From: Klebsormidium nitens
Lineage: Eukaryota > Plantae > Klebsormidiophyceae
Assembly (NCBI GenBank): GCA_000708835.1
Contig: DF237602.1
Location: 1-46,224, forward strand
Direction: 5' to 3'
DNA length: 46,224 nt
Part shown: positions 8,109 through 31,205 of the stretch, one piece after another
Layout of the letters: the number at the start of each line of letters is the position of its first letter
Numbering within the stretch: the first letter of the stretch is position 1
Notes under the pieces: model-generated
The model's database searches: none
Seen by the model: the letters and a program-made list of their open reading frames with translations, nothing else
What the model was told of the DNA's origin: nothing
Translations under genes and position numbers: made by a program

Positions 8109-8955
8109 ATTGGTTATACATCGAGGATCTTATTCGCATGTTTCAGATGCGACGTACAACGTCACATCTTAAGTGAATAGCTCCGCTCTTCAATGCTCGT
8201 ATACTTTGCTGCTGGGAAATCTGTTACATCTCACGCTTTATGCACGATTGGAAAGGTTCACGAAGTCAGTCTTTTTCTTTTGTGGAGGGCAAACCTGTTG
8301 CGTGGATTCGAGTTGGTTCATTGCATCAATTGCAACTAAGAAGGGGGCTGTTTGATTTGTAGAGGGTTCAGAGTGTCCGTACTCAGCATGCTTGCAGTCT
8401 GTCGTCTCGAAAGATTTTCACCTTTTCTTTCTCGGTGCTTGGATGCGCAACATCATCTTGGCGCGTGTCACTGATTACGTGAGTCCAAACTTTCTTCAAG
8501 CAATAGGAATCCAATCCGCATGCAAGCGAAAGACATGCGAGCCTGGCAAACCGCGTATGCAGCTTGGACAAAAGCGACCAGTGTCCAGATAACCGTCCCT
8601 TGATTCGCACAAGCATGACGTCTTTCTAGCTAAGTGCATCCAATCGAGATACTTGAGTATAACATGTCAACTTGGGTGCCACGTAACGCACTGGCGTCAA
8701 CTTTCTGAGACCATAGGTAGACAGTCGCAAATCATGCAGATTTACGACATGCGCAATTTTGCCGGCGGTTTCCATGTGGAGCTACTTAGCCGCCTATGTT
8801 TCGTGCACTTGCAGATTTTACGACTTGCTGTCTTGAGAGCTCATGTCTCAATCGAATCTGCCCTAGCTCACTATGGACACGTAAGCAACACAAGATGCAC
8901 ATTATGATTGCTTGTTGAGGAACTCAACAGCATCCAACTTGGGTGATGACTGGCG

Positions 8956-8984
8956 GCGCCAGTGGGCAGGCCCCCCACTGGCGC
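8956..8984. repeat. GC-rich 11-bp hairpin
   Basis: gcgccagtggg (8956-8966), 7-nt loop, cccactggcgc (8974-8984). Confidence 0.8.
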
Positions 8985-9644
8985 GGCCGCGCGCCCTGGA
9001 GGTGATGCAGACTACACAGCCGCGATAATATTTGTCGCTGGATGCAGTGATGCACATCATTGGGGGCCCCCGTTCATGTGTCTGATGATCACGTACGGGC
9101 AGAACGTTAAGGAATGGGCTCTTCTGAAGGTTCAAGGTTGAGACAAACATGTAAGACATGATAATACTCTGATGTGTGCTTCAACGGCTTGAATCGACTG
9201 GATTTTCGCAGCAGGAATTTCCACCGTTACGCTACGTTAAGGATCTTTCCTTGTGAGAACGCCACCGAAGCAAAATGTTTTAGGACGTAAGCCATATGGG
9301 CTGTCAGAAACAATTGAGAGGACGATGCGTCTTTCTTACAACAGAAACGTTACCAAATCTTGCAAGCTTGCTGCATTATACCTATAACCACAGCTCGTCC
9401 AGTGATGCAACTTCCCTACAGCCTGTGACTCGCATAACTGAGAATGCTAGTTCAATCAAACGCTTCAATACCATACGGCTGACCAACACATTGTTTACAG
9501 CGATTCAACATGCACACGTCTTTCATTTCCAGTGACTAAATCTCGAGCCTTACGACTCAACCTGAGTATTGCTTACGTGTCTTGAATTGTACACAACATC
9601 TGAATCTTATCTGACGAAAACTCTGATCAAAACAGCAACACAGT

Positions 9645-11945
9645 TCAATCGTCCTGGGGCCCGAGTCTTTTGTCGAAGTCGTCCTTCCACCTCTCCTCAA
9701 TATCTTCCAACAAGAGCAGCGAATTCGACTGGTCTGCTTTCTCCTCCTTTCCTAAGTTCTCCCCAGCCGCTTTCTCGCGCTCTGATTCCCATTCCATCAA
9801 CGCACTTTCGTAAGCTTCCTTCTGCTTCCGAATCAGTACTGTGGCCACGGATACAAAGACCCCCACCCACACAGCCGGAGACGAAATCACCGCTTCAATG
9901 AAGACTCCCGGTTCAAGGGCGCCTTCTGTCGCCTTCGAAACGACGTTGAAAAACTTCATGTAGGCACTCCGTTCAGGCGCCTGGGCGACCTCTATCGGCG
10001 TCGAAAGCGCTCTTGCCAAGGGGAGCACCAGGGGTGAGGCGAACAAAAGGGCGACCAACGACCCCGGTAGAAGCTCCCACCGCGGAACGGGCACCCGAAG
10101 CGGAACTTTGCACAGGAACGGAACGATCACGATCCGCTCGAAGTTGAGGGTGAGGGCGAACGGGTGGAGCTTCCAACCGAGCCCGGGGCAAAGAGCGCAA
10201 ACTAGGTTGGTGAGAAAAGAAGAATCCGCGGTCATCTTGCGGGGGGGGAGTCTCGCTCGGGCGGCTTCGTCTAGTGTTTGTATCAGGGACTGAACCTCTG
10301 AGGCGAGGCTTCCGAGCAGTGCCAGGGACAGGAAAGCCTCCCAACCGACCGCGACTGGGCCGTCGAGGAAAGGCGTGATTGCCGGTTGGGATCCCCCGAG
10401 AGCCAGGATGAGAAGCGGGAGGGGCTGGGGCAGGGCTGCAAAAGAGGGGTAATAAACATGCGTTGAGAAATCGTGACTTTGTTGGGTTAAGACGCTGCCC
10501 AGGGGGACGGGCTGGGTTGGTTTGAGGGTTAAGGTGTTTACGGTGCGGAGCACGTTAACTTCGGCTTTGGTTTACTTCGTCTATGTAAGCCCGGAGAATC
10601 TAAAGTTTGCTGAGCGGTTTCACACGGCAGCTACTTGTGGGAGTGAGAGGAGGACCCGCAGAATCGTGAAAGCCTTGGTTTCTGTCGAGACAGGAATCGG
10701 CTCCAAACTTTCACCGATAAGCGCGCCAAACCACTTACATGAAGCTCAAAATCGGAGGAATCCGTTCAGCATCTTGTCGTCCCACAGCGGAAACATACAA
10801 CGGTTCAGCCGAATTGGGGCGGCATCTAGCCGGAATCTCAGCCAGGAAGTCAGCAGCCGGGTTGATCTGACTCGATCTAGGCCACGGAACCGAAACTTAC
10901 CTGCAACAGCGCTCGCCAGAAGCCAGAAACTCCACCCCCCAATCGTATGGTCTTTGTAGAGCTGGATCAACCACTGGAGCTCGAAGAGAGGGGCGTAATA
11001 CAGCAGCAATGTGACCGGGAGCTTGAGCAATGCGGAGAAGAGCTGCCCGGTTCCGTCCGCCAGGTACGAACCGACCAGCTCGTCTGACGTCACGCTGACG
11101 TCAGGCTCGTCCGGGGGCGTCGGGAGGTCGGGGTACTCCCACTGGGAGGCTTTAGTGACCGAGTTGTAGTAGAACGGGAGCTTCTCTCGGGGGTAGTACA
11201 GGTTGTGCCACTCGGGGGGAAGCTCCGGTCGCCTAGGTTCGAACTGGCCCCTCAGCTCGGCTTCGATTCCGAGTATCTGATAAACGGGAACCGCGAAACA
11301 TGCAATGATGGCTAAAAGGAAGATGAACGCGCTCATGTCCTCCCTGTTGGTTGGGTCGATTTTTCCGGCGATGCACAACTGGATGAGGAACCAGGTCATA
11401 GCAGCTGTGAGGAGGAACGCAATGAATGTGCCTGCAGAAGGGCCCCAATCTGTCGGCGGGGAAGAGTAGGGGACTCTCTCCGGGGGCTCTGGCCGGCTTG
11501 CCTGGGCGCATATGAGGCGTCTCTTTGCCCTGGTACTGCCAGACTGCCTTCCCTGAAGTCTGTTGCTGTGAAATCCTCCCAAAGTGAGGCTTTGATGCCC
11601 CTCTGACAAAGTTCTGAAGCCTGATGGCATGCGGACTATATCTGCTTTGGTTGGATGAACTATTCCTAGCTGGACTCGCTGATGACCTCCCCTGAAGCTC
11701 ATGTGGTTTCCTCGTGCTTTGCAGATGTTAACATTCTGCCCTGCCCTTGTGCAACTCCACAGCTTCTGACGACTTGCAACCCCATGGAATGCGCTGTCTT
11801 GATCAACCAGAGCGACCACCCTACAACGACGCTGGCCACTAGTGTGCAAGCTTGCTGACACAGCGGCTGTGCTGATGCTATGCACACTCCTGGTTTGGGA
11901 GCCAGCAGACACGTGGCCCCCCAGGGCAGCACCTAAAATCACCAT
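9645..11945 (-). CDS. WW-domain multi-pass membrane protein, paralog 3 (exons 11945-10901 and 10435-9645; 611 aa)
   Basis: ATG 11945; donor GCAG|GTAAGT at 10900 and acceptor TTTTGCAG| at 10436; phase-1 join restores SAVA-ALPQPLP as in the paralogs; WW LPPEWHNLY...YYNSVTKASQWEYP; 1836 nt in frame. Confidence 0.9.
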
Positions 11946-25034: not shown

Positions 25035-26624
25035 CAACAACATGCAACATTCCGCATGACTGAGTTGGGGGTGCACGCGGCCTCACTTGTAATAAGCCGT
25101 CGGCTTTCAAGCCGGGACTTTGTAATATCAGTTCGTCAGCAGGATCTGCGGACCATTAGACGGATGTCCACAAGATAGAAACGAACGCGAAGCCAACAAC
25201 GTGGACGTTATAACAGGTAGCTCGCGCTGGTTTTAACGCACAAATCTACTAAAAGGTCACATTGAGCCTTAAAGTTAGTCGTCAAGCACACTACCAGCGA
25301 GTAGCTGATCGACTCGTTCATTGCGACTTGGCAATTACCATTGAGTATGATGACTCAGGCTGCAAGTACAAGGTGTGACCGTCTGCAGGAGTCGCTAATA
25401 TCCCAGCGCTTTGCACTCGGAGGACGTTGTAACCGTCGGTTCTAATCAAGTCAACGCCCAGCGATCATCATGGCATTGAAGCGAAATATTGGTACCAAGA
25501 GGCTCAGTGATAGTATGCAGGCTAGCGTGCAATCTAGTGACCACGAGCCGCGCACTTAGTGACGCTTGGTCGTTACATTCTGCAATTCAACCACAGGCGC
25601 CAGGCTTTAGGTGACTGCATCCTACCTATACCATATCTCAGCGCGCGGCAGCTGCAGCATATGATATTGCACGGTGGTGCGATCATCGACCGTCTCATCT
25701 GGCACATAGGTATGGTATACGTATGCTTGCCGCCAAGCTAGCTACCGTGCATCATGCATGCACAAGTCAAAGCATATATATGATCGACCCAATTTAATGA
25801 TTGCGTGATAATAAGTTTGGTCGGACGGTTGACGCGTGCAGTGGGCCCCGGGCCCCGGGTTGTGCAGAAGGAGAAGGGATTAGTGGTCCGTTAAAGACAC
25901 TCGACCAATGCGTTTGATCAACTATGAAGCATCCTTGTACTAGCCGAATGATTTCAAACAACCCGCTTATAAAATCCGGGCCACGCTTTTCCGCTTTGGC
26001 TTGAAACGAGGTTTCCTTACACGTTCGTTGACATGACGTTCTCCTAACACGAGCAATCCAACGGAGCACATAGTGACCGCTACGGGTTTGTTACTGGACC
26101 CAGCGTGGTTTGTGGGCCGGTTACTACGCAATTCCGAATCCGTGAAAGTCAATGAAGCACTCAATCATCCTACCTCCGACCAAAATTGCGGGAAGGTAGC
26201 TTATACAGTGTTACCAAGAACGGCTTTCTCGAAGAGGCTTTGACCCTGCCAACGGGCCGCCCAATCACGTAGAAGTGGCAAGAATAATTTCTCTCAAAGA
26301 TGCAAAATCATGTCTGGCCCGGCACCGTCCGACTGCATCTTGAGTTGTTCTCAACGCCTGGGCCGGACTCTACAGACTCTTCTTGTGAAATCAACCCTGA
26401 TGACTACATTGGTCAATCAAAACCCGCTGCAGCAAACCACGAAGAGCCCTTGTGTTCATTCTGACGCCAGGCTCTACAAAAATGGAATTCAAATCCAGGA
26501 AACCGAGAGGTTGTTGATCAGGAGAAAACCGGGTTCTACATTAGGAATATGAGAACCTAAAAGCTGGTAGACAAAGCTGCCTGTTGGGTACTGCAGCCGT
26601 TTGCAGACTACTTGGGCCGGTCAC

Positions 26625-29600
26625 TCAATGACCGCAAAAGGCCAATGCGTACGCCAAGGTTGCTGCCTGGGCACTCTCGTACGCGGCTTTAGAACCAAAG
26701 TCGGTGCTGCAAATGCGGACGCAATTATCAGCATATTGACGTCACAATGCGCGCACTGATTCACAACGTCACTCGTCTGCTTCGAATGATGATCTCGAAC
26801 CAATGCTCAGTCAAAGAACTAGTTGATAGCAAGCCTCCGACACTCTTATGAGTACCCAGCTGGAGACCCATCTCAAGAGCGCTCTGTCGAAGGAACCTGC
26901 CACTTACGAGAAGAAGAGGCGTCCGACCCGTGCTGTCATGCGGCATCGGGCCGCCGCAAATGACGTAGGCACCACATCGCAGGCTTCGCGGGTGCGTACG
27001 TAAAGTTCGTCGTCACAGGTAGATTTGCTGGCGCCAGGAGTTGAGTAGCACACGTCATGGAAGTTGCAACCAGGTGCGAACAAATCGCTGCTTCCAGCAC
27101 CACCGATGAAGTTGATAACCTTTCCCACGAGTCCTCCTGTATCACAGCAAAGAGCGGATAGCGAATAGCGGTCAGCGGATAGGGGATAGCGGAGAGCATC
27201 GGAAAGCGGTTCAGCGCGTGGCTGCAAGAAGCATCACTGGACGTAATGACGCCGTCTGTTTAAACCGACAAAAGAGTCAGCCAGCAGTGTTGCACTTTCA
27301 CTGGATCAAAACGTTTGGCACAGTTCGTCTCACCATTGGACACCTGTCCACACGCGTTGTAGTCCCCCGGGTAAGCAGGGCACTTGACCCCAGGCGCACG
27401 AGACCGACAGCATTTGCTCCCGCATACCAGTACGCCGCCAACACTGTAGGGACAATCCTTGGAGCAAACCGGGTCTGCAGGTACACATGTACGGATCAAT
27501 CAGTGGCGAAGTGAACACGTCAATCTGCTGATTAGACCTTTAGTCAATTCCACAGCCGTAATAGCGAGCTAGAGAAATCAATTGTTGCCCGAGAGCAACT
27601 TGCATGATGGAAGTTGAACCTAAAATATATGGAGTGACCGTCTGGCAGCTTGAGATAGAGACGAAATTTAGAGAAGCGTGCACTGCGGACAGGGGCCCAC
27701 ATGGGCACCCAAAGGTGACCGAATCAATTTGACAGGCATTGACCAAGCTTTTCCTTGGTAAGAAACGTCCGCTGTTGACCTTTCAAGTACGTTACTATCC
27801 ACCGTCGTTTATTCATGCGACTGCATAGTAACTGAAAGCGCGATCAGTTTTTGTAAGAGACATAGCAAAAGTGACACGTGAGCAGGAGTAAATATGAACC
27901 AATCCAGGGCCGCCAGGCACGAGAACTGAAAACAACGGAACTTCACTACCTGACGTAGTAATGGGAGGAGCTGAAGATGGGGAAGGGAAGCCCTTTGCAA
28001 ACAGGCTGTTCGGATCGATATCCGTCTCTCCAACTGCCGGCTCCAGGGCGGAAACGAAGCCAGATGTAAAGGCCGTGAGAACCTCTTCAACGGCCTGACC
28101 ATCGACCGTTATTGTCGTCTCGACGATACTACCGGCGCCATCGTTGGTTGGCTGAATGCTCGTGATCGAGACCTGCACCGTATCGGTCGGTTTGTAGAGG
28201 GGACAAGCTTGATCCTTCATATATGTACACACAAGTTGAGGCAGCCTAGAGAAACGTTTGACCCCCGTTTGACCTTCCTTAATCTGGACGACGATGCCTT
28301 ACGCAAAAGTTTGCAATCTAAAAAGCTGGCCCCGAGGTTCCTAAAAATAGTTGCTGCCATGATGCATTCATGCATCAAGACCCCTCAGAAAGTTGCGCCG
28401 GTCAATACAAGCTAATTGCAGCCTATTTCACATTCAAAGTGCCGTTATAGGAGCCGGCCTGATTAAGGACCGTCTGCCACTGAGCCGATCTCATAGGCCG
28501 CATGATGATCAGGTCGGAACCAAGCCGATACAAAACAAGAAGCCTGAAGAAGAAAGCTTACCTCTTCTACCGCAGTCGAGGACTGCAATAAAGCCTGTAC
28601 ATAGCTCGTTTGTTTGTCAGCATCAAAGCTCTCCGGTGGCAAGGTTCTGATGGTAAATGACCCCACAATTTGGAATTGAGTATTGGAGTCTGTCAAAGAG
28701 AAGCAGAGGAATCCTTTAAAAGAGAAGCAGAGGAATCCTTTGAAAGAATCTTTTTAGGAAGGAAAGCGACGAGAGCACGGTTGAAGAGAGTAACAAAACT
28801 TGCAATCGAGGGGACGATGAAGTACGAGAGCAAGTTCATCACATGATCTGTCTATATAGTCCAACGTGGCCGCAACGGTATCAAGACCAACTGAATTGAT
28901 TCCGAAATCTACTTGCCGTCACACCGCATACATTTTCGTGACGAGGAACTTCAAACAACATGCTTTACAGATGTGATCATCTGTTGCTAGATCATTGTGC
29001 AGATTGCGCAAGAGGTGGCTGCTGGTGAATCGGACAGCAAGAAAAGGACCCACCTGTAGGCCTAGGAGTTGAACTTTTTGGGGTCGGGGTTGGAGTGACT
29101 CGAGTGGTCGGAGTAGGAGTAGTGGGCGCAGGAGTCGTAGGCATGGGAGTCGTGGGGGCGGGAGTTGTGGGGGCGGGAGTTGTAGGAGTAGGAGTTGTTG
29201 GGGTGGGAGTTGTTGGGGTGGGAGTTGTTGGGGTAGGAGTTGTTGGGGTAGGAGTTGTCGGGGCGGGAGTTGTTGGGGCAGGAGTTGTAGGAGCGGGGGT
29301 TGTTGGGGCAGGAGAGTTTGGGGGCAGAGTTGTGGGGCTAGGAGTGGCTGGCGGGAGGGTGGTAGCCAGCGGGGCCAAAGTGCTTGGGGTGGGGGTGGAG
29401 ACTGTTGGCTGGGGAGTAACCGAGGCCGTAGGACTGCCCGTTGTTGGAATGGGAGACACTTTTGTTGGACTGGGGCTGGTAGACAGGGATTGGCAAGAAG
29501 GGGGGTTGGTCGGCGGGTTAGCACATTGATAACCTGAGGCACAGCAGAGAGGACCTTGACCCTCCGGTCCATAGCAGGGAGTGGCGCCGTCTGCGGAGCA

Positions 29601-30722
29601 AGAGACTTGCCCAAGCGAAGCGGCAGCGGTCCCTGTAGGAGTTGGGGACTGAAGCGGGGAGCTTGGTGCCGAGCTGGATGGGCCCCCTAGATTGCTTTTG
29701 ACGCAAGCAGGGGGGCTGGTGGGTGGCGAAGCGCACTGATACTCTGGGCTTATGCAGCAGATCGGGCCCTCCCCCCCTGGCCCATAGCACTGAGTCGTCC
29801 CCATATTGCTGCAAGGAACCTCCCCTGCGGATGCAGTGGCGCTTGGAGCAGGGCTGCTTCCGGAAGCCCCAGGAGGGGGAGGAAAGACGGGGCTGGGGTT
29901 ATCGACACGTGGGTAGATTGCCTGACAAGAAGGTGGGCTCGTTGGGGGGGTGGAGCACTGGAACAGCGGACCCGCACAGCATACTGGGCCTTCTCCCATT
30001 GGGCCATAACACGCACTTGCTCCCTCCGCTCCACAAGGAACCACGCCCTCACCTGGGGCAGCAAGCCTAGAAACCAAACGGACAGGTGGTGTGTCCAGCG
30101 CGTATGAGTTTTTCTCAAAGCAGTAGCCTGCTGAAGGGGCAGGACACCGAATGAAACCGTCGGAGTTATCCCCTGATCTCACGCACAATGGTTCACCGTC
30201 TGCTAGCACGCAACACTCGAAACCAGGCTCGCAGCACAGTGGAAAGAAGTTCTTCCCCCCCACGCATTGACGTTTGGGAGGCAGGCACTTTGGGACGCAG
30301 CCATAACCCCCAAGATCGCAGTCATAATCCGGTAGGCAACAATCAATGGCGTAAGAAGGGGGTGGGCCCGCCGAAACAATCTGGCTCGAATAGCAACATG
30401 TTGTCCCGGGTGGGCAACCAAAGGTATCGTCCGGCTGATGGCAGCACTGATCCGTGGCATATATACGGTTTGCACCACAGCATACTTCCCCAGGGAAAGC
30501 ACAAGCAAGCCGGAGCAAACCGTATCGGGTACCCAAGCAGCAGGTTGCTTCATTAAGACAGTAGACATCGTCTCGGATGTCCACACTGGTGCAGCATTTT
30601 GAATCCGGATTTAATGCGGCCTGCTCGCATCGGTCGACCCCTTCAACTAAAAGCAAGACAGTGACCAACGTAACCCAAAACAGGGCCTGCTTGCTGCGCA
30701 TTGTGTTGGCTAAGCTGCTCAT
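26625..30722 (-). CDS. Secreted mosaic protein: Cys-rich region, 3 CBM1-like modules, Pro/Thr stalk, SEA-like segment, secretory phospholipase A2 domain (exons 30722-29054, 28689-28562, 28172-27950, 27474-27334, 27136-26908, 26706-26625; 823 aa)
   Basis: Signal peptide MRSKQALFWVTLVTVLLLVEG. Five GT-AG introns with matching phases (2472 nt). C-terminal NACG...FAPGCNFHDVCY...KSTCDDEL...AC...FGSKAAYESAQ matches the sPLA2 His-Asp motif (group XII/conodipine/microbial type). Confidence 0.82.
27147..27215. repeat. Degenerate heptamer array (GATAGCG-like) just upstream of the exon 5 acceptor
   Basis: gatagcg aatagcg gtcagcg gataggg gatagcg gagagca; on the minus strand it contains the branch-like CTGAC. 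Confidence 0.6.
28695..28741. repeat. 24-bp tandem duplication of the polypyrimidine tract of the exon 2 acceptor
   Basis: aaagagaagcagaggaatccttt at 28695-28717 and 28719-28741; acceptor AG ends at 28690. Confidence 0.9.
29103..29312 (-). repeat. Coding 15-bp minisatellite, 14 units, encoding (P[A/T/M]PTT)14
   Basis: Seen directly in the ORF 28992..30782 translation and DNA. Confidence 0.95.
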
Positions 30723-30871
30723 ATGAATGCCAGGCCAATGCAACCTAGTCTCAAAGATGCCCGAGATTTCCTTCGGGTACAATCACCTGCCCTTCTCGGG
30801 TCAAAGACAGCAAAGAGATGCGCCTGCTTCAATGTCCACCAAGCTGCCCAATGGCCCCTCAATGGAATGTC

Positions 30872-30900
30872 GCAGGAACTGCAGGAACTGCAGGAACTGC
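30872..30900. repeat. 9-bp tandem repeat (gcaggaact)x3, 150 bp upstream of the mosaic gene start
   Basis: Seen directly. Confidence 0.9.
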
Positions 30901-31205
30901 GCGGTCCCCCTCCTTTGAAGACTAGCGTGCCGTCTACATCCTACGCGAACTCGGTGGTAGCTGGGAGTGTTGTCAATGTCAGTGTGTCCGGGCCAGTGCC
31001 GAATCACACCCGTCCGCCCGTCTACACGGTCTAGCTCGTTAGAAAACATCATACAGAGGGAGCCGGCGGCCTGTAAAATCTGAGATTAAAAGTTGTTTTT
31101 GGATTTGGATCGTCCGATCCCCGTGACGTCAGCTTACAAGAGCGCTTATTCGTCGATTCGCCTGTCCTTGTTGATTTATTGAAAAATTTGAAATCGCAAG
31201 CATGG

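What the first reader, a model, noticed from the sequence alone, without database searches (positions are those of the whole stretch)
26625..30722. Secreted wall-protein-like mosaic ending in a phospholipase A2 domain
Seen: signal peptide, CC-rich region, three 6-Cys repeats, (PxPTT)14 stalk, a ~115-aa beta/alpha segment and, only after joining exons 4-6, NACG...FAPGCNFHDVCY...KSTCDDELY...AC...FG..AAYESAQ. Known: CxxHDxCY with a downstream CD is the His-Asp signature of secretory PLA2; this spacing resembles animal group XII, conodipine and microbial group XIV enzymes more than plant group XI; Pro/Thr stalks are O-glycosylated spacers. Inference: a wall- or mucilage-tethered lipase on a long stalk, possibly for defence, lipid scavenging or surface remodelling; I know of no described protein with this architecture. 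The raw ORF track hides it because exon 1 alone looks like an extensin.
Basis: partly seen in the sequence, partly recalled or inferred. Interest (0 to 1): 0.82.

Follow-up and report, generated by a model that had tools for sequence, protein, structure and literature searches.

The report
Stalked secreted algal phospholipase A2
A green alga (reported as Klebsormidium nitens) expresses one 823-residue secreted protein that joins cysteine-rich modules, a Pro/Thr stalk and a SEA-like fold to a group-XII-like phospholipase A2 domain with intact catalytic residues. It belongs to a small, unnamed algal family that plant PLA2 surveys have not covered.

Summary
The six-exon minus-strand model (ATG 30722, TGA 26627-26625) is confirmed. 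All five GT..AG junctions appear in spliced contigs from four runs of four studies, and overlapping contigs link exon 1 to the PLA2 exons.

Exon 5 alone hits Pfam PLA2G12 (E 3e-5, below the cut-off). It has 56 relatives in 1.84 billion proteins, and 53 of the 55 aligned domain segments hit PLA2G12. A profile of these segments finds the solved microbial PLA2s 1faz and 4aup. The window protein keeps every invariant residue (C-x-x-H-D-x-C-Y and C-D).

A model of a 43-44% identical relative has Tuber borchii PLA2 as its top structural match (Z 8.6).

The architecture is not unique. The cassette "ferredoxin/SEA-like domain, Cys knot, PLA2" recurs in a K. nitens paralog (GAQ81272.1), in Myrmecia bisecta (KAK9803982.1) and in unnamed eukaryotic contigs, with different N-terminal modules. 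All are hypothetical proteins, and I found no paper on them.

SEA membership is unproven: there is no Pfam hit and the fold match is generic. A GS[IV][IVL] motif does sit at the predicted beta2-beta3 hairpin.

Enzyme activity, tethering and biological role remain inference.

This scan also noted a related PAN/Apple fusion elsewhere in this genome.

The parts
30723..30963 (-). 5' UTR. Transcript contigs start at 30954-30963. It holds a minimal uORF (ATG-stop) at 30939.
29054..30722 (-). Exon 1 (556 codons plus 1 nt): signal peptide, CC-rich region, three six-Cys repeats and the Pro/Thr stalk.
   Evidence: X3 record 13 covers 29054-30954 in one piece
30645..30722 (-). Signal-peptide-like N-terminus (residues 1-26): basic n-region, then the hydrophobic core ALFWVTLVTVLLLV.
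   Evidence: hydropathy. No dedicated predictor was run.
30120..30629 (-). CC-rich region (residues 32-201, 27 Cys). No family recognised.
29487..30047 (-). Three six-Cys repeats (residues 226-268, 300-342, 371-412) separated by Pro/Ser-rich linkers. They resemble the two N-terminal repeats of paralog P0003.
   Evidence: blastp against P0003 E 1e-6 in the small local database
29055..29462 (-). Pro/Thr stalk (residues 421-556). The 14 P-x-P-T-T units lie at 29103-29312.
28562..28689 (-). Exon 2: first half of the alpha/beta (SEA-like) domain, covering beta1 and helix 1.
27950..28172 (-). Exon 3: second half of the alpha/beta domain. The G-S-I-V-E motif lies at 28119-28133.
   Evidence: the fold was tested by proxy on P0025
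27334..27474 (-). Exon 4: Cys knot (6 Cys) plus the N-A-C-G loop that aligns with the N-G-C-G of relatives.
   Evidence: (50% identity to P0003, E 4e-13)
26908..27136 (-). Exon 5: PLA2 core. C-N-F-H-D-V-C-Y at 27045-27068 (His 27057-27059, Asp 27054-27056). The helix-3 Asp of C-D-D-E-L-Y is at 27012-27014.
26625..26706 (-). Exon 6: last PLA2 helix (..AAYESAQAATLAYALAFCGH) and the TGA stop.
26200..26624 (-). 3' UTR, at least 425 nt. The contigs run on past the stretch that was laid.

Best explanation
The locus is one expressed gene for an 823-residue secreted modular protein.

Domain order, from the N-terminus:
1. Signal peptide.
2. An unclassified CC-rich region.
3. Three copies of an orphan six-Cys module.
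4. A 136-residue Pro/Thr spacer.
5. A ferredoxin-like (SEA-like) alpha/beta domain.
6. A six-Cys knot.
7. A helical secretory phospholipase A2 domain of the PLA2G12-like branch, in the same clan as microbial groups XIII/XIV.

Shown: the transcript structure, the homology of the C-terminal domain, and the retention of all family-invariant residues. These are the His-Asp of C-x-x-H-D-x-C-Y, the Tyr, and the Asp on the next helix; the N-x-C-G loop is also present, though not an invariant column.

Inferred mechanism: outside the cell the domain binds Ca2+ through the N-A-C-G loop and the Asp of H-D. The His, held by the second Asp, activates a water molecule. The enzyme then cleaves the sn-2 ester of phospholipids at a membrane surface.

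Inferred targeting: the N-terminal Cys-rich modules set where the enzyme sits, on a wall polymer or a foreign surface. The stalk, probably glycosylated, holds the lipase away from that anchor.

Paralogs and relatives keep the SEA-like, knot and PLA2 cassette and swap the N-terminal modules. I therefore read the family as one lipolytic head delivered by interchangeable binding parts.

My preferred role is action on foreign (microbial) membranes. Remodelling or signalling on the alga's own surface is second.
For: - One transcript, in frame. All five junctions are present in four runs. X3 record 13 joins E3-E2-whole E1. X2 record 6 and X4 record 15 join the 3'UTR-E6-E5-E4-E3-E2 and, for X4 record 15 (30 nt past the joint), the end of E1. 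The exon sum is 2472 nt, which is 824 codons.
- PLA2 homology. PF06951 hits exon 5 at E 3.1e-5. The language-model look-alikes are PF09056/PF06951 clusters. There are 56 relatives, and 53 of 55 aligned domain segments hit PF06951. The family profile hits PDB 1faz at 4e-11 and 4aup at 2.8e-8.
- Catalytic residues. The invariant columns C23, H26, D27, C29, Y30 and C40 and the near-invariant D41 and C52 are all present in exon 5.
- Fold. The AF2 model of P0002:20-185 has pLDDT 78. P0002 is 43%, 44% and 35% identical to E4, E5 and E6. Its top hit among 48,161 chains is Tuber borchii PLA2 4aup_B, with Z 8.6, rmsd 2.8 A and 92 residues aligned. Foldseek gives 4aup probability 0.96.
- Cassette relatives. 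These are P0003 (K. nitens GAQ81272.1), P0024 (Myrmecia bisecta), P0025/P0060/P0061, P0047 and P0002.
- Bacterial relatives. Several are C-terminal domains of RHS-repeat proteins, which fits a membrane-attacking use.
Against: - No activity data exist.
- The Pfam score of exon 5 alone (24.4 bits) is under the 34-bit cut-off. The whole domain could not be scored because joining exons was barred.
- The structural evidence comes from a homolog, not the window protein. Z 8.6 is only just above the level common for helical models.
- From memory: human group XIIA is a weak enzyme and XIIB is inactive, so membership of this branch does not guarantee strong catalysis.
- The loop reads N-A-C-G where relatives have N-G-C-G.
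- The total Cys count in E4-E6 is odd (13).
- No anchor motif was found, and the N-terminal modules match nothing known. Targeting is therefore a guess.
Confidence: 0.75

Rival explanations
1. The PLA2-like domain is catalytically weak or dead. It would act as a lipid- or receptor-binding module, and the protein would be a structural or adhesive wall glycoprotein.
For: - The closest curated family (PLA2G12) includes weak and inactive members (from memory, not tested here).
- Exon 5 scores below the Pfam cut-off.
- The loop reads NACG instead of NGCG.
- Most of the protein is Cys-rich or Pro/Thr-rich, like wall proteins.
Against: - Every invariant position of 55 relatives is kept, including His, Asp, Tyr and the second Asp.
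- The same residues are kept in the algal cassette relatives. That argues for selection on catalysis.
Confidence: 0.15
2. The alpha/beta domain before the PLA2 is a true SEA domain that cleaves itself at G|S. The lipase head would then be held non-covalently and could be shed by force or unfolding.
For: - GSIVE (window), GSIIA (P0003), GSVIV (P0025/60/61) and GSVLV (P0047) align at one place.
- In the P0025 model, G65-S66 lies in the turn between strands 54-63 and 66-76.
- SEA autoproteolysis uses GSVVV/GSIVA in the beta2-beta3 loop of a ferredoxin-like sandwich (PMC6954182).
- SEA domains 2e7v (Z 7.3), 7sa9 (Z 5.8) and 6v55 (Z 5.9) are among the matches.
Against: - There is no PF01390 hit at E<=10 for the exons or for relatives' domains.
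- PheRS, MscS and S6 ferredoxin-like domains score as high or higher (Z 8.1-6.3).
- The model has low confidence (pLDDT 52-79) and lacks strand 4.
- The window protein has five extra residues in the hairpin (QPTNDGAGS), which could relieve the strain that cleavage needs.
- Exons 2 and 3 match the relatives' domain only weakly: 4.2 and 5.4 bits, reached by 5 and 10 of 500 shuffles.
Confidence: 0.2
3. The alpha/beta domain is a ferredoxin-like prodomain, acting as an intramolecular chaperone or inhibitor. It would keep the lipase latent until a protease removes it, so the protein is a zymogen.
For: - The domain always sits directly before the knot-PLA2 unit in relatives.
- The fold is a generic beta-alpha-beta-beta-alpha sandwich.
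- From memory: fungal group XIII/XIV enzymes and pancreatic PLA2 are made with propeptides.
Against: - No protease prodomain appears in the top 50 structural matches.
- No dibasic or other obvious processing site was seen between the domains.
- This is pure inference.
Confidence: 0.2
4. Two neighbouring genes (an extensin-like gene and a small PLA2 gene) have been wrongly merged.
For: - No single listed contig spans the whole gene. The Pro/Thr repeat breaks some assemblies.
- The tool warns that a contig across two genes shows no single transcript.
Against: - X3 record 13 runs from exon 3 through exon 2 and all of exon 1.
- X2 record 6 and X4 record 15 run from the 3' UTR through exons 6-2 and, for X4 record 15 (30 nt), into exon 1.
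- The frame is open across all junctions.
- There is no start codon or signal peptide for a separate downstream gene.
- Relatives have the same order in one ORF. P0025 is intronless.
Confidence: 0.03

Closest known systems
Group XII secretory PLA2 (Pfam PF06951, PLA2G12)
   Same: - It is the only Pfam family hit by exon 5 (profile positions 101-137, the catalytic helix).
- The core motif is shared: C-x-x-H-D-x-C-Y-x-T-x-G-x-x-K-x-x-C-D.
- An N-x-C-G loop lies upstream.
- 53 of the 55 aligned domain segments hit this family.
   Different: - The score is below the curated cut-off when scored exon by exon.
- A 28-residue insert (with an extra helix in the model) lies between the loop and the catalytic helix.
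- An added six-Cys knot precedes the domain.
- The domain sits at the end of an 823-residue multidomain protein. From memory, the animal enzyme is a protein of about 190 residues.
Microbial group XIII/XIV sPLA2 (Streptomyces violaceoruber 1faz, Tuber borchii 4aup; Pfam PF09056)
   Same: - The family profile matches them at E 4e-11 to 1e-5.
- 4aup is the best structural match of the homolog model, with Z 8.6.
- The core is all-helical, with His-Asp on one helix and the partner Asp on the next.
   Different: - The microbial enzymes read H-D-F-G-Y without the Cys after H-D, and have fewer disulfides (alignment).
- PF09056 is not hit by exon 5.
- They are single-domain proteins.
Plant group XI sPLA2 and PLA2-like (PA2c domain; PMC9995887)
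   Same: They are secreted, Ca2+-dependent, His-Asp lipases found in green plants and algae.
   Different: - It is a different family. There is no hit to the PA2c-type Pfam model.
- The Y-G-K-Y-C-G-x-x-x-x-G-C calcium loop is absent.
- Plant sPLA2s are 90-191 residues with 12 Cys (PMC9995887).
- That survey counted PA2c proteins only. A non-PA2c domain such as this one falls outside such a count.
K. nitens GAQ81272.1 (KFL_000760015) and [Myrmecia] bisecta KAK9803982.1, both 'hypothetical protein'
   Same: - They share the C-terminal cassette: alpha/beta domain with a GS motif, C-x3-C-P..C-G-x-x-C-C..C-P-A-F..N-G-C-G knot, and PLA2 core.
- GAQ81272.1 also has two six-Cys repeats.
- In GAQ81272.1 the intron between knot and core lies at the same place and phase.
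   Different: - They lack the CC-rich region and the 14-unit stalk.
- The Myrmecia protein has a pentapeptide-repeat N-terminus and a C-terminal Cys-rich tail.
- Identity to the window protein is only 40-50% in E4/E5.
- The public K. nitens model looks truncated.
SEA domain (PF01390) of mucins, TMPRSS and adhesion GPCRs
   Same: - The predicted topology is beta-alpha-beta-beta-alpha.
- A G-S-[IV]-[IVL] motif lies at the beta2-beta3 turn.
- The domain follows a mucin-like Pro/Thr stalk.
   Different: - There is no sequence-profile match.
- The structural match ties with unrelated ferredoxin-like domains.
- No membrane anchor follows it. An enzyme does.

Membership tests
PLA2G12-like secretory PLA2 (PF06951 clan) | Profile match above the curated cut-off | tested here: inconclusive
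   Exon 5 alone scores 24.4 bits, E 3.1e-5, against a cut-off of 34. The domain is split over three exons that could not be joined. Relatives found with exon 5 score up to 57.8 bits.
PLA2G12-like secretory PLA2 (PF06951 clan) | Catalytic His-Asp in C-x-x-H-D-x-C-Y, plus the partner Asp on the next helix | tested here: met
   H26, D27, Y30 and D41 of exon 5 fall in the invariant or near-invariant columns of 55 relatives. In the profile alignment to 1faz, D41 aligns with the Asp of K-S-R-I-D.
PLA2G12-like secretory PLA2 (PF06951 clan) | Calcium loop N-G-C-G upstream of the catalytic helix | tested here: met
   Exon 4 ends ..YNACGQVSN, aligned with the NGCG of P0002, P0003, P0024, P0025 and P0047. 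The Gly is replaced by Ala. Metal binding itself was not tested.
PLA2G12-like secretory PLA2 (PF06951 clan) | Helical PLA2 fold | tested here: inconclusive
   Tested by proxy only. The model of P0002:20-185 (pLDDT 78) has 4aup_B as best of 48,161 chains, with Z 8.6, rmsd 2.8 A and 92 residues aligned. That Z is near the background for helical models. It agrees with the sequence-profile hit to 4aup.
PLA2G12-like secretory PLA2 (PF06951 clan) | Ca2+-dependent sn-2 hydrolysis of phospholipids | not testable with these tools
   This needs an enzyme assay.
Microbial group XIV sPLA2 (PF09056) | H-D-F-G-Y type active-site helix and a match to the PF09056 profile | tested here: not met
   Exon 5 reads H-D-V-C-Y and gives no PF09056 hit at E<=10. 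Only 22 of 55 relatives hit it. It is the same clan, not this family.
Plant group XI sPLA2 (PA2c) | PA2c profile match and the Y-G-K-Y-C-G-x-x-x-x-G-C loop | tested here: not met
   No such Pfam hit at E<=10 for any exon. The loop motif is absent from exons 4-5. The motif is as given in PMC9995887.
SEA domain (PF01390) | Profile match | tested here: not met
   No hit at E<=10 for exon 2, exon 3 or the equivalent domains of P0025, P0060, P0003 and P0024.
SEA domain (PF01390) | Ferredoxin-like alpha/beta sandwich | tested here: inconclusive
   Tested on the P0025 model, residues 13-105. SEA 2e7v scores Z 7.3 and MUC16 SEA Z 5.8. PheRS (Z 8.1, 7.8), MscS and S6 domains tie or beat them. Exons 2 and 3 align to this domain only weakly.
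SEA domain (PF01390) | G|S-V-V-V type motif in the beta2-beta3 loop, and self-cleavage | tested here: inconclusive
   The motif is present: GSIVE in the window, GSVIV, GSIIA and GSVLV in relatives, at the modelled hairpin. Cleavage cannot be tested here.

The most novel reading that the evidence does not exclude
Green algae have an undescribed family of "addressed lipases". One conserved head, made of a self-cleaving SEA-type domain, a Cys knot and a group-XII-like PLA2, is fused to interchangeable binding modules (six-Cys repeats, a CC-rich region, PAN/Apple, pentapeptide repeats). After G|S cleavage the lipase would be held non-covalently on a glycosylated stalk and released by force or unfolding at a target surface. 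This would place functional SEA autoproteolysis outside animals, coupled to an enzyme instead of a membrane anchor.
Probability: 0.15. Interest if true: 0.8.

Novelty: new variant of a known kind. Interest (0 to 1): 0.58.

Why it matters
Plant and algal sPLA2 biology has been written around the small group XI (PA2c) enzymes (PMC9995887). This gene shows that a streptophyte alga close to the land-plant lineage also makes a secretory PLA2 of a different lineage, group XII / microbial-like. Here the domain is built into a large modular extracellular protein.

The gene appears to be missing from public protein sets.

The conserved cassette with swapped N-terminal modules gives a testable case of domain shuffling that directs a membrane-active enzyme to different extracellular addresses.

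If the GS motif cleaves, it would extend SEA-type autoproteolysis to green algae.

On the practical side, the cassette is a compact, disulfide-rich lipase that could be expressed and assayed directly.

Tried and rejected
- Word-index searches found almost nothing. Exon 1 residues 1-330 gave no hit, not even itself. P0024 residues 185-445 found only itself. The cassette alignment A3 added only two near-copies of P0025.
- Exon 5 against PDB sequences by phmmer gave only a chance kinase hit at E 1.3. The family profile was needed to reach the PLA2 entries.
- Foldseek against PDB gave no hit at E<=0.001 for either model. The ESM Atlas shape search of the P0025 model gave only generic or unrelated folds, all with TM <= 0.32 by query.
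- The N-terminal modules stayed unclassified. Pfam at E<=10 gave nothing on three sub-stretches. PDB phmmer gave nothing on two. The Atlas feature search gave nothing. A granulin-like reading of the CC-rich region was considered and dropped for lack of any profile hit.
- MAFFT misplaced exons 2 and 3 when they were aligned as free fragments. They were re-aligned with --addfragments.
- The tree of PLA2 cores has an unresolved backbone, so it says nothing about origin or transfer.
- The two-gene model is rejected.
- The organism name rests on an earlier scan note and on the K. nitens paralog. I did not confirm it for this window.
- As a result, there is no whole-domain Pfam score and no structure of the window's own PLA2 or SEA-like domain.


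Full report
**Observation**

The region holds a six-exon gene on the minus strand. I read the splice sites from the sequence.

| Exon | Coordinates |
|---|---|
| E1 | 30722..29054 |
| E2 | 28689..28562 |
| E3 | 28172..27950 |
| E4 | 27474..27334 |
| E5 | 27136..26908 |
| E6 | 26706..26625 (TGA at 26627-26625) |

The exons add up to 2472 nt, which is 823 codons plus the stop, with an open frame across every junction.

I laid the contigs of four public runs from four different studies on 26200-31100. All five joints were present in all four runs, each with GT..AG ends on the minus strand. The skipped lengths were 364, 389, 475, 197 and 201 nt, exactly as predicted.

The runs are labelled only "RNA?" in the index. 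The spliced joints show that the contigs derive from RNA.

- X3 record 13 (2252 nt) runs from exon 3 through exon 2 and the whole of exon 1 to 30954.
- X2 record 6 and X4 record 15 run from the 3' UTR through exons 6, 5, 4, 3 and 2; X4 record 15 carries 30 nt past the exon 2-exon 1 joint, and record 6's unlisted first 281 nt fit exon 2 plus the end of exon 1.
- No single listed contig spans everything, because the Pro/Thr repeat breaks assemblies. The overlapping contigs and the continuous frame still leave little room for a two-gene reading.
- Low-depth contigs over introns 1-3 look like unspliced RNA.

The only upstream ATG in the 5' UTR (30939) is followed at once by a stop.

**Protein features**

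Exon 1 encodes the following:
- A signal-peptide-like start: a basic stretch, then ALFWVTLVTVLLLV.
- 27 Cys between residues 32 and 201, many as CC pairs.
- Three repeats of the pattern C-x7-C-x9-CC-x5/6-C-x9-C.
- A Pro/Thr region (residues 421-556) that contains exactly 14 P-x-P-T-T units. TRF sees the corresponding DNA array.

None of the N-terminal modules matches Pfam, PDB sequences or the ESM Atlas.

**A rule I followed**

Each exon was searched by reference. The fold questions were addressed through full-length natural relatives returned by the searches.

**The PLA2 domain**

- Exon 5 alone (75 residues) hits Pfam PLA2G12 (PF06951) at E 3.1e-5 and 24.4 bits. The match is on the catalytic-helix part of the profile and is below the 34-bit cut-off.
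- Language-model look-alikes are bacterial clusters carrying PF09056 or PF06951.
- A full HMMER scan of 1.84 billion representatives found 56 relatives at E <= 1e-3, the best at 4e-9. It found no close ortholog and no copy of the protein itself.
- Of 55 aligned domain segments, 53 hit PF06951 and 22 hit PF09056.
- In that alignment the invariant columns are C23, H26, D27, C29, Y30 and C40 of exon 5. D41 and C52 are nearly invariant. The window protein has them all.
- A profile of the alignment finds four solved structures:

| PDB entry | Enzyme | E-value |
|---|---|---|
| 1faz | Streptomyces violaceoruber PLA2 | 4e-11 |
| 7ygk | phospholipase A2 | 5e-9 |
| 4aup | Tuber borchii PLA2 | 2.8e-8 |
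| 8k1w | PLA2 | 1e-5 |

- In the 1faz alignment the family's C-D aligns with the Asp that follows the catalytic helix.
- Exons 4 and 6 are homologous to the flanks of the domain in the nearest relatives. Exon 4 supplies a six-Cys knot and the N-A-C-G loop. Exon 6 supplies the last helix.
- An AlphaFold model of P0002:20-185 reached pLDDT 78. P0002 is 43%, 44% and 35% identical to exons 4, 5 and 6.
- The best match of that model among 48,161 representative chains was Tuber borchii PLA2 4aup_B, with Z 8.6, rmsd 2.8 A and 92 residues aligned. Foldseek gave the same entry probability 0.96, though with a non-significant E-value.
- Z 8.6 alone would be weak for a helical model. Together with the sequence-profile hit to the same entry it is convincing for the family.

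The H-D-x-C-Y motif and the Pfam pattern place the domain on the group XII side of the clan. It is not group XIV (H-D-F-G-Y), and it is not plant group XI: there is no PA2c-type hit and no Y-G-K-Y-C-G loop (PMC9995887).

**A family, not a singleton**

The nearest relatives share more than the PLA2 core. Each has an alpha/beta domain, then the same Cys knot (C-x3-C-P .. C-G-x-x-C-C .. C-P-A-F .. N-G-C-G), then the PLA2.

- P0003 is K. nitens GAQ81272.1, a hypothetical protein.
- P0024 is [Myrmecia] bisecta KAK9803982.1, a hypothetical protein.
- P0025, P0060 and P0061 come from ENA eukaryote-sized contigs.
- P0047 and P0002 come from Logan assemblies.

The K. nitens paralog also has two six-Cys repeats like those of exon 1. 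It has an intron between knot and core at the same place and phase. Its public model appears truncated, and an exon-6-like stretch lies downstream inside the next annotated gene.

P0025 carries the cassette in one uninterrupted ORF.

Another note of this scan (s1-326898) reports a PAN/Apple x3, SEA-like, PLA2 fusion elsewhere in the same genome. I did not check it.

In a tree of the cores, exon 5 groups with the paralog, P0002, P0025, P0047 and some short unnamed proteins (support 81/84). The backbone is unresolved.

More distant relatives include C-terminal domains of bacterial RHS-repeat proteins.

**The middle domain**

A model of P0025 has mean pLDDT 61.5, with 52-79 over the middle domain. 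It gives beta(16-26), alpha(37-50), beta(54-63), beta(66-76), alpha. P-G65-S66 sits in the hairpin between the second and third strands.

Structural matches are ferredoxin-like sandwiches in general: PheRS domains at Z 8.1 and 7.8, and MscS and S6 at about 6. SEA domains are among them: 2e7v at Z 7.3, Gpr126 at 5.9 and MUC16 at 5.8.

SEA autoproteolysis occurs at GSVVV or GSIVA in the beta2-beta3 loop of such a fold (PMC6954182). The algal proteins read GSVIV, GSVLV and GSIIA. The window protein reads GSIVE at the aligned place, with five extra loop residues.

Against SEA membership:
- There is no PF01390 hit at E <= 10.
- Exons 2 and 3 match a small HMM of the relatives' domains only weakly. 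They score 4.2 and 5.4 bits, reached by 5 and 10 of 500 shuffles, though they are collinear and in the expected order.

I call the domain SEA-like and leave membership open. A prodomain role is an equally fair reading.

**Mechanism**

Shown: one secreted-type precursor, expressed, ending in a PLA2G12-like domain with all conserved catalytic and disulfide positions.

Inferred: Ca2+-dependent sn-2 hydrolysis outside the cell; targeting by the Cys-rich modules; spacing by an O-glycosylated stalk.

The recurrence of the cassette behind different N-terminal modules suggests a common lipolytic head with interchangeable addresses. The use of related domains in bacterial RHS proteins tilts me toward action on foreign membranes, but this is inference.

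**Novelty**

The enzyme class is known. Three things are new: its presence as a group-XII-like lineage in green algae, the knot extension, and the multidomain cassette.

I found no paper on this. My searches combined Klebsormidium with sPLA2, PLA2G12 with algae, SEA with PLA2, and group XII with plants. They cover only the held library.

The gene itself seems absent from public protein sets.

The organism name comes from earlier scan notes and fits the K. nitens paralog. I did not verify it for this window.

Noticed in passing
L003:8600-9400 (K. nitens DF237025.1, paralog GAQ81272.1): The public 362-residue model ends 14 residues after the helix-3 Cys and lacks the last PLA2 helix. An exon-6-like stretch (..DAYNVAQTASLDYATRSCGH) lies at about 9331-9396, inside the next annotated gene (8880-10328). 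The paralog therefore looks truncated or split in the annotation.
   Followed up: partly
window:30937-30942 (minus strand): The only upstream ATG in the 5' UTR (30939) is followed directly by a stop codon, making a minimal uORF.
   Followed up: no
window:27448-29083: Low-depth contigs (depth 3-9, against 75-170 for the spliced ones) cover introns 1-3. They most likely represent unspliced RNA. Retention of intron 1 would end the frame 21 codons after exon 1.
   Followed up: no
window:26625-30722: Neither large protein library holds exon 1 residues 1-330, or exon 5 at more than 58% identity, although the K. nitens proteome is in them. This gene appears to be unannotated or mis-modelled in public sets.
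   Followed up: partly
P0017, P0032, P0033, P0043 (bacterial relatives): PLA2G12-like domains sit at the C-terminus of proteins with RHS repeats or an RHS-type core end, like the toxin tips of polymorphic toxin systems.
   Followed up: partly
P0024 ([Myrmecia] bisecta KAK9803982.1): The same cassette is combined with an N-terminal Pentapeptide_2 match (29.7 bits, above the cut-off), and with a Pro/Thr linker and a Cys-rich tail after the PLA2 domain.
   Followed up: no
window:29487-30047 and scan note s1-313253: Another K. nitens gene cluster was noted to carry three copies of an orphan six-Cys module behind a proline-rich stalk. I did not check whether it is the same module as the three repeats here.
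   Followed up: no
window:28695-28747 and 27153-27197: Short tandem repeats lie inside introns 1 and 4: a 24-nt unit x2.2 and a 7-nt unit x6.4.
   Followed up: no
P0015 (1068 aa), P0001, P0004, P0007: Several relatives carry two PLA2G12-like domains in tandem. P0015 repeats a large unknown N-terminal module before each one.
   Followed up: no
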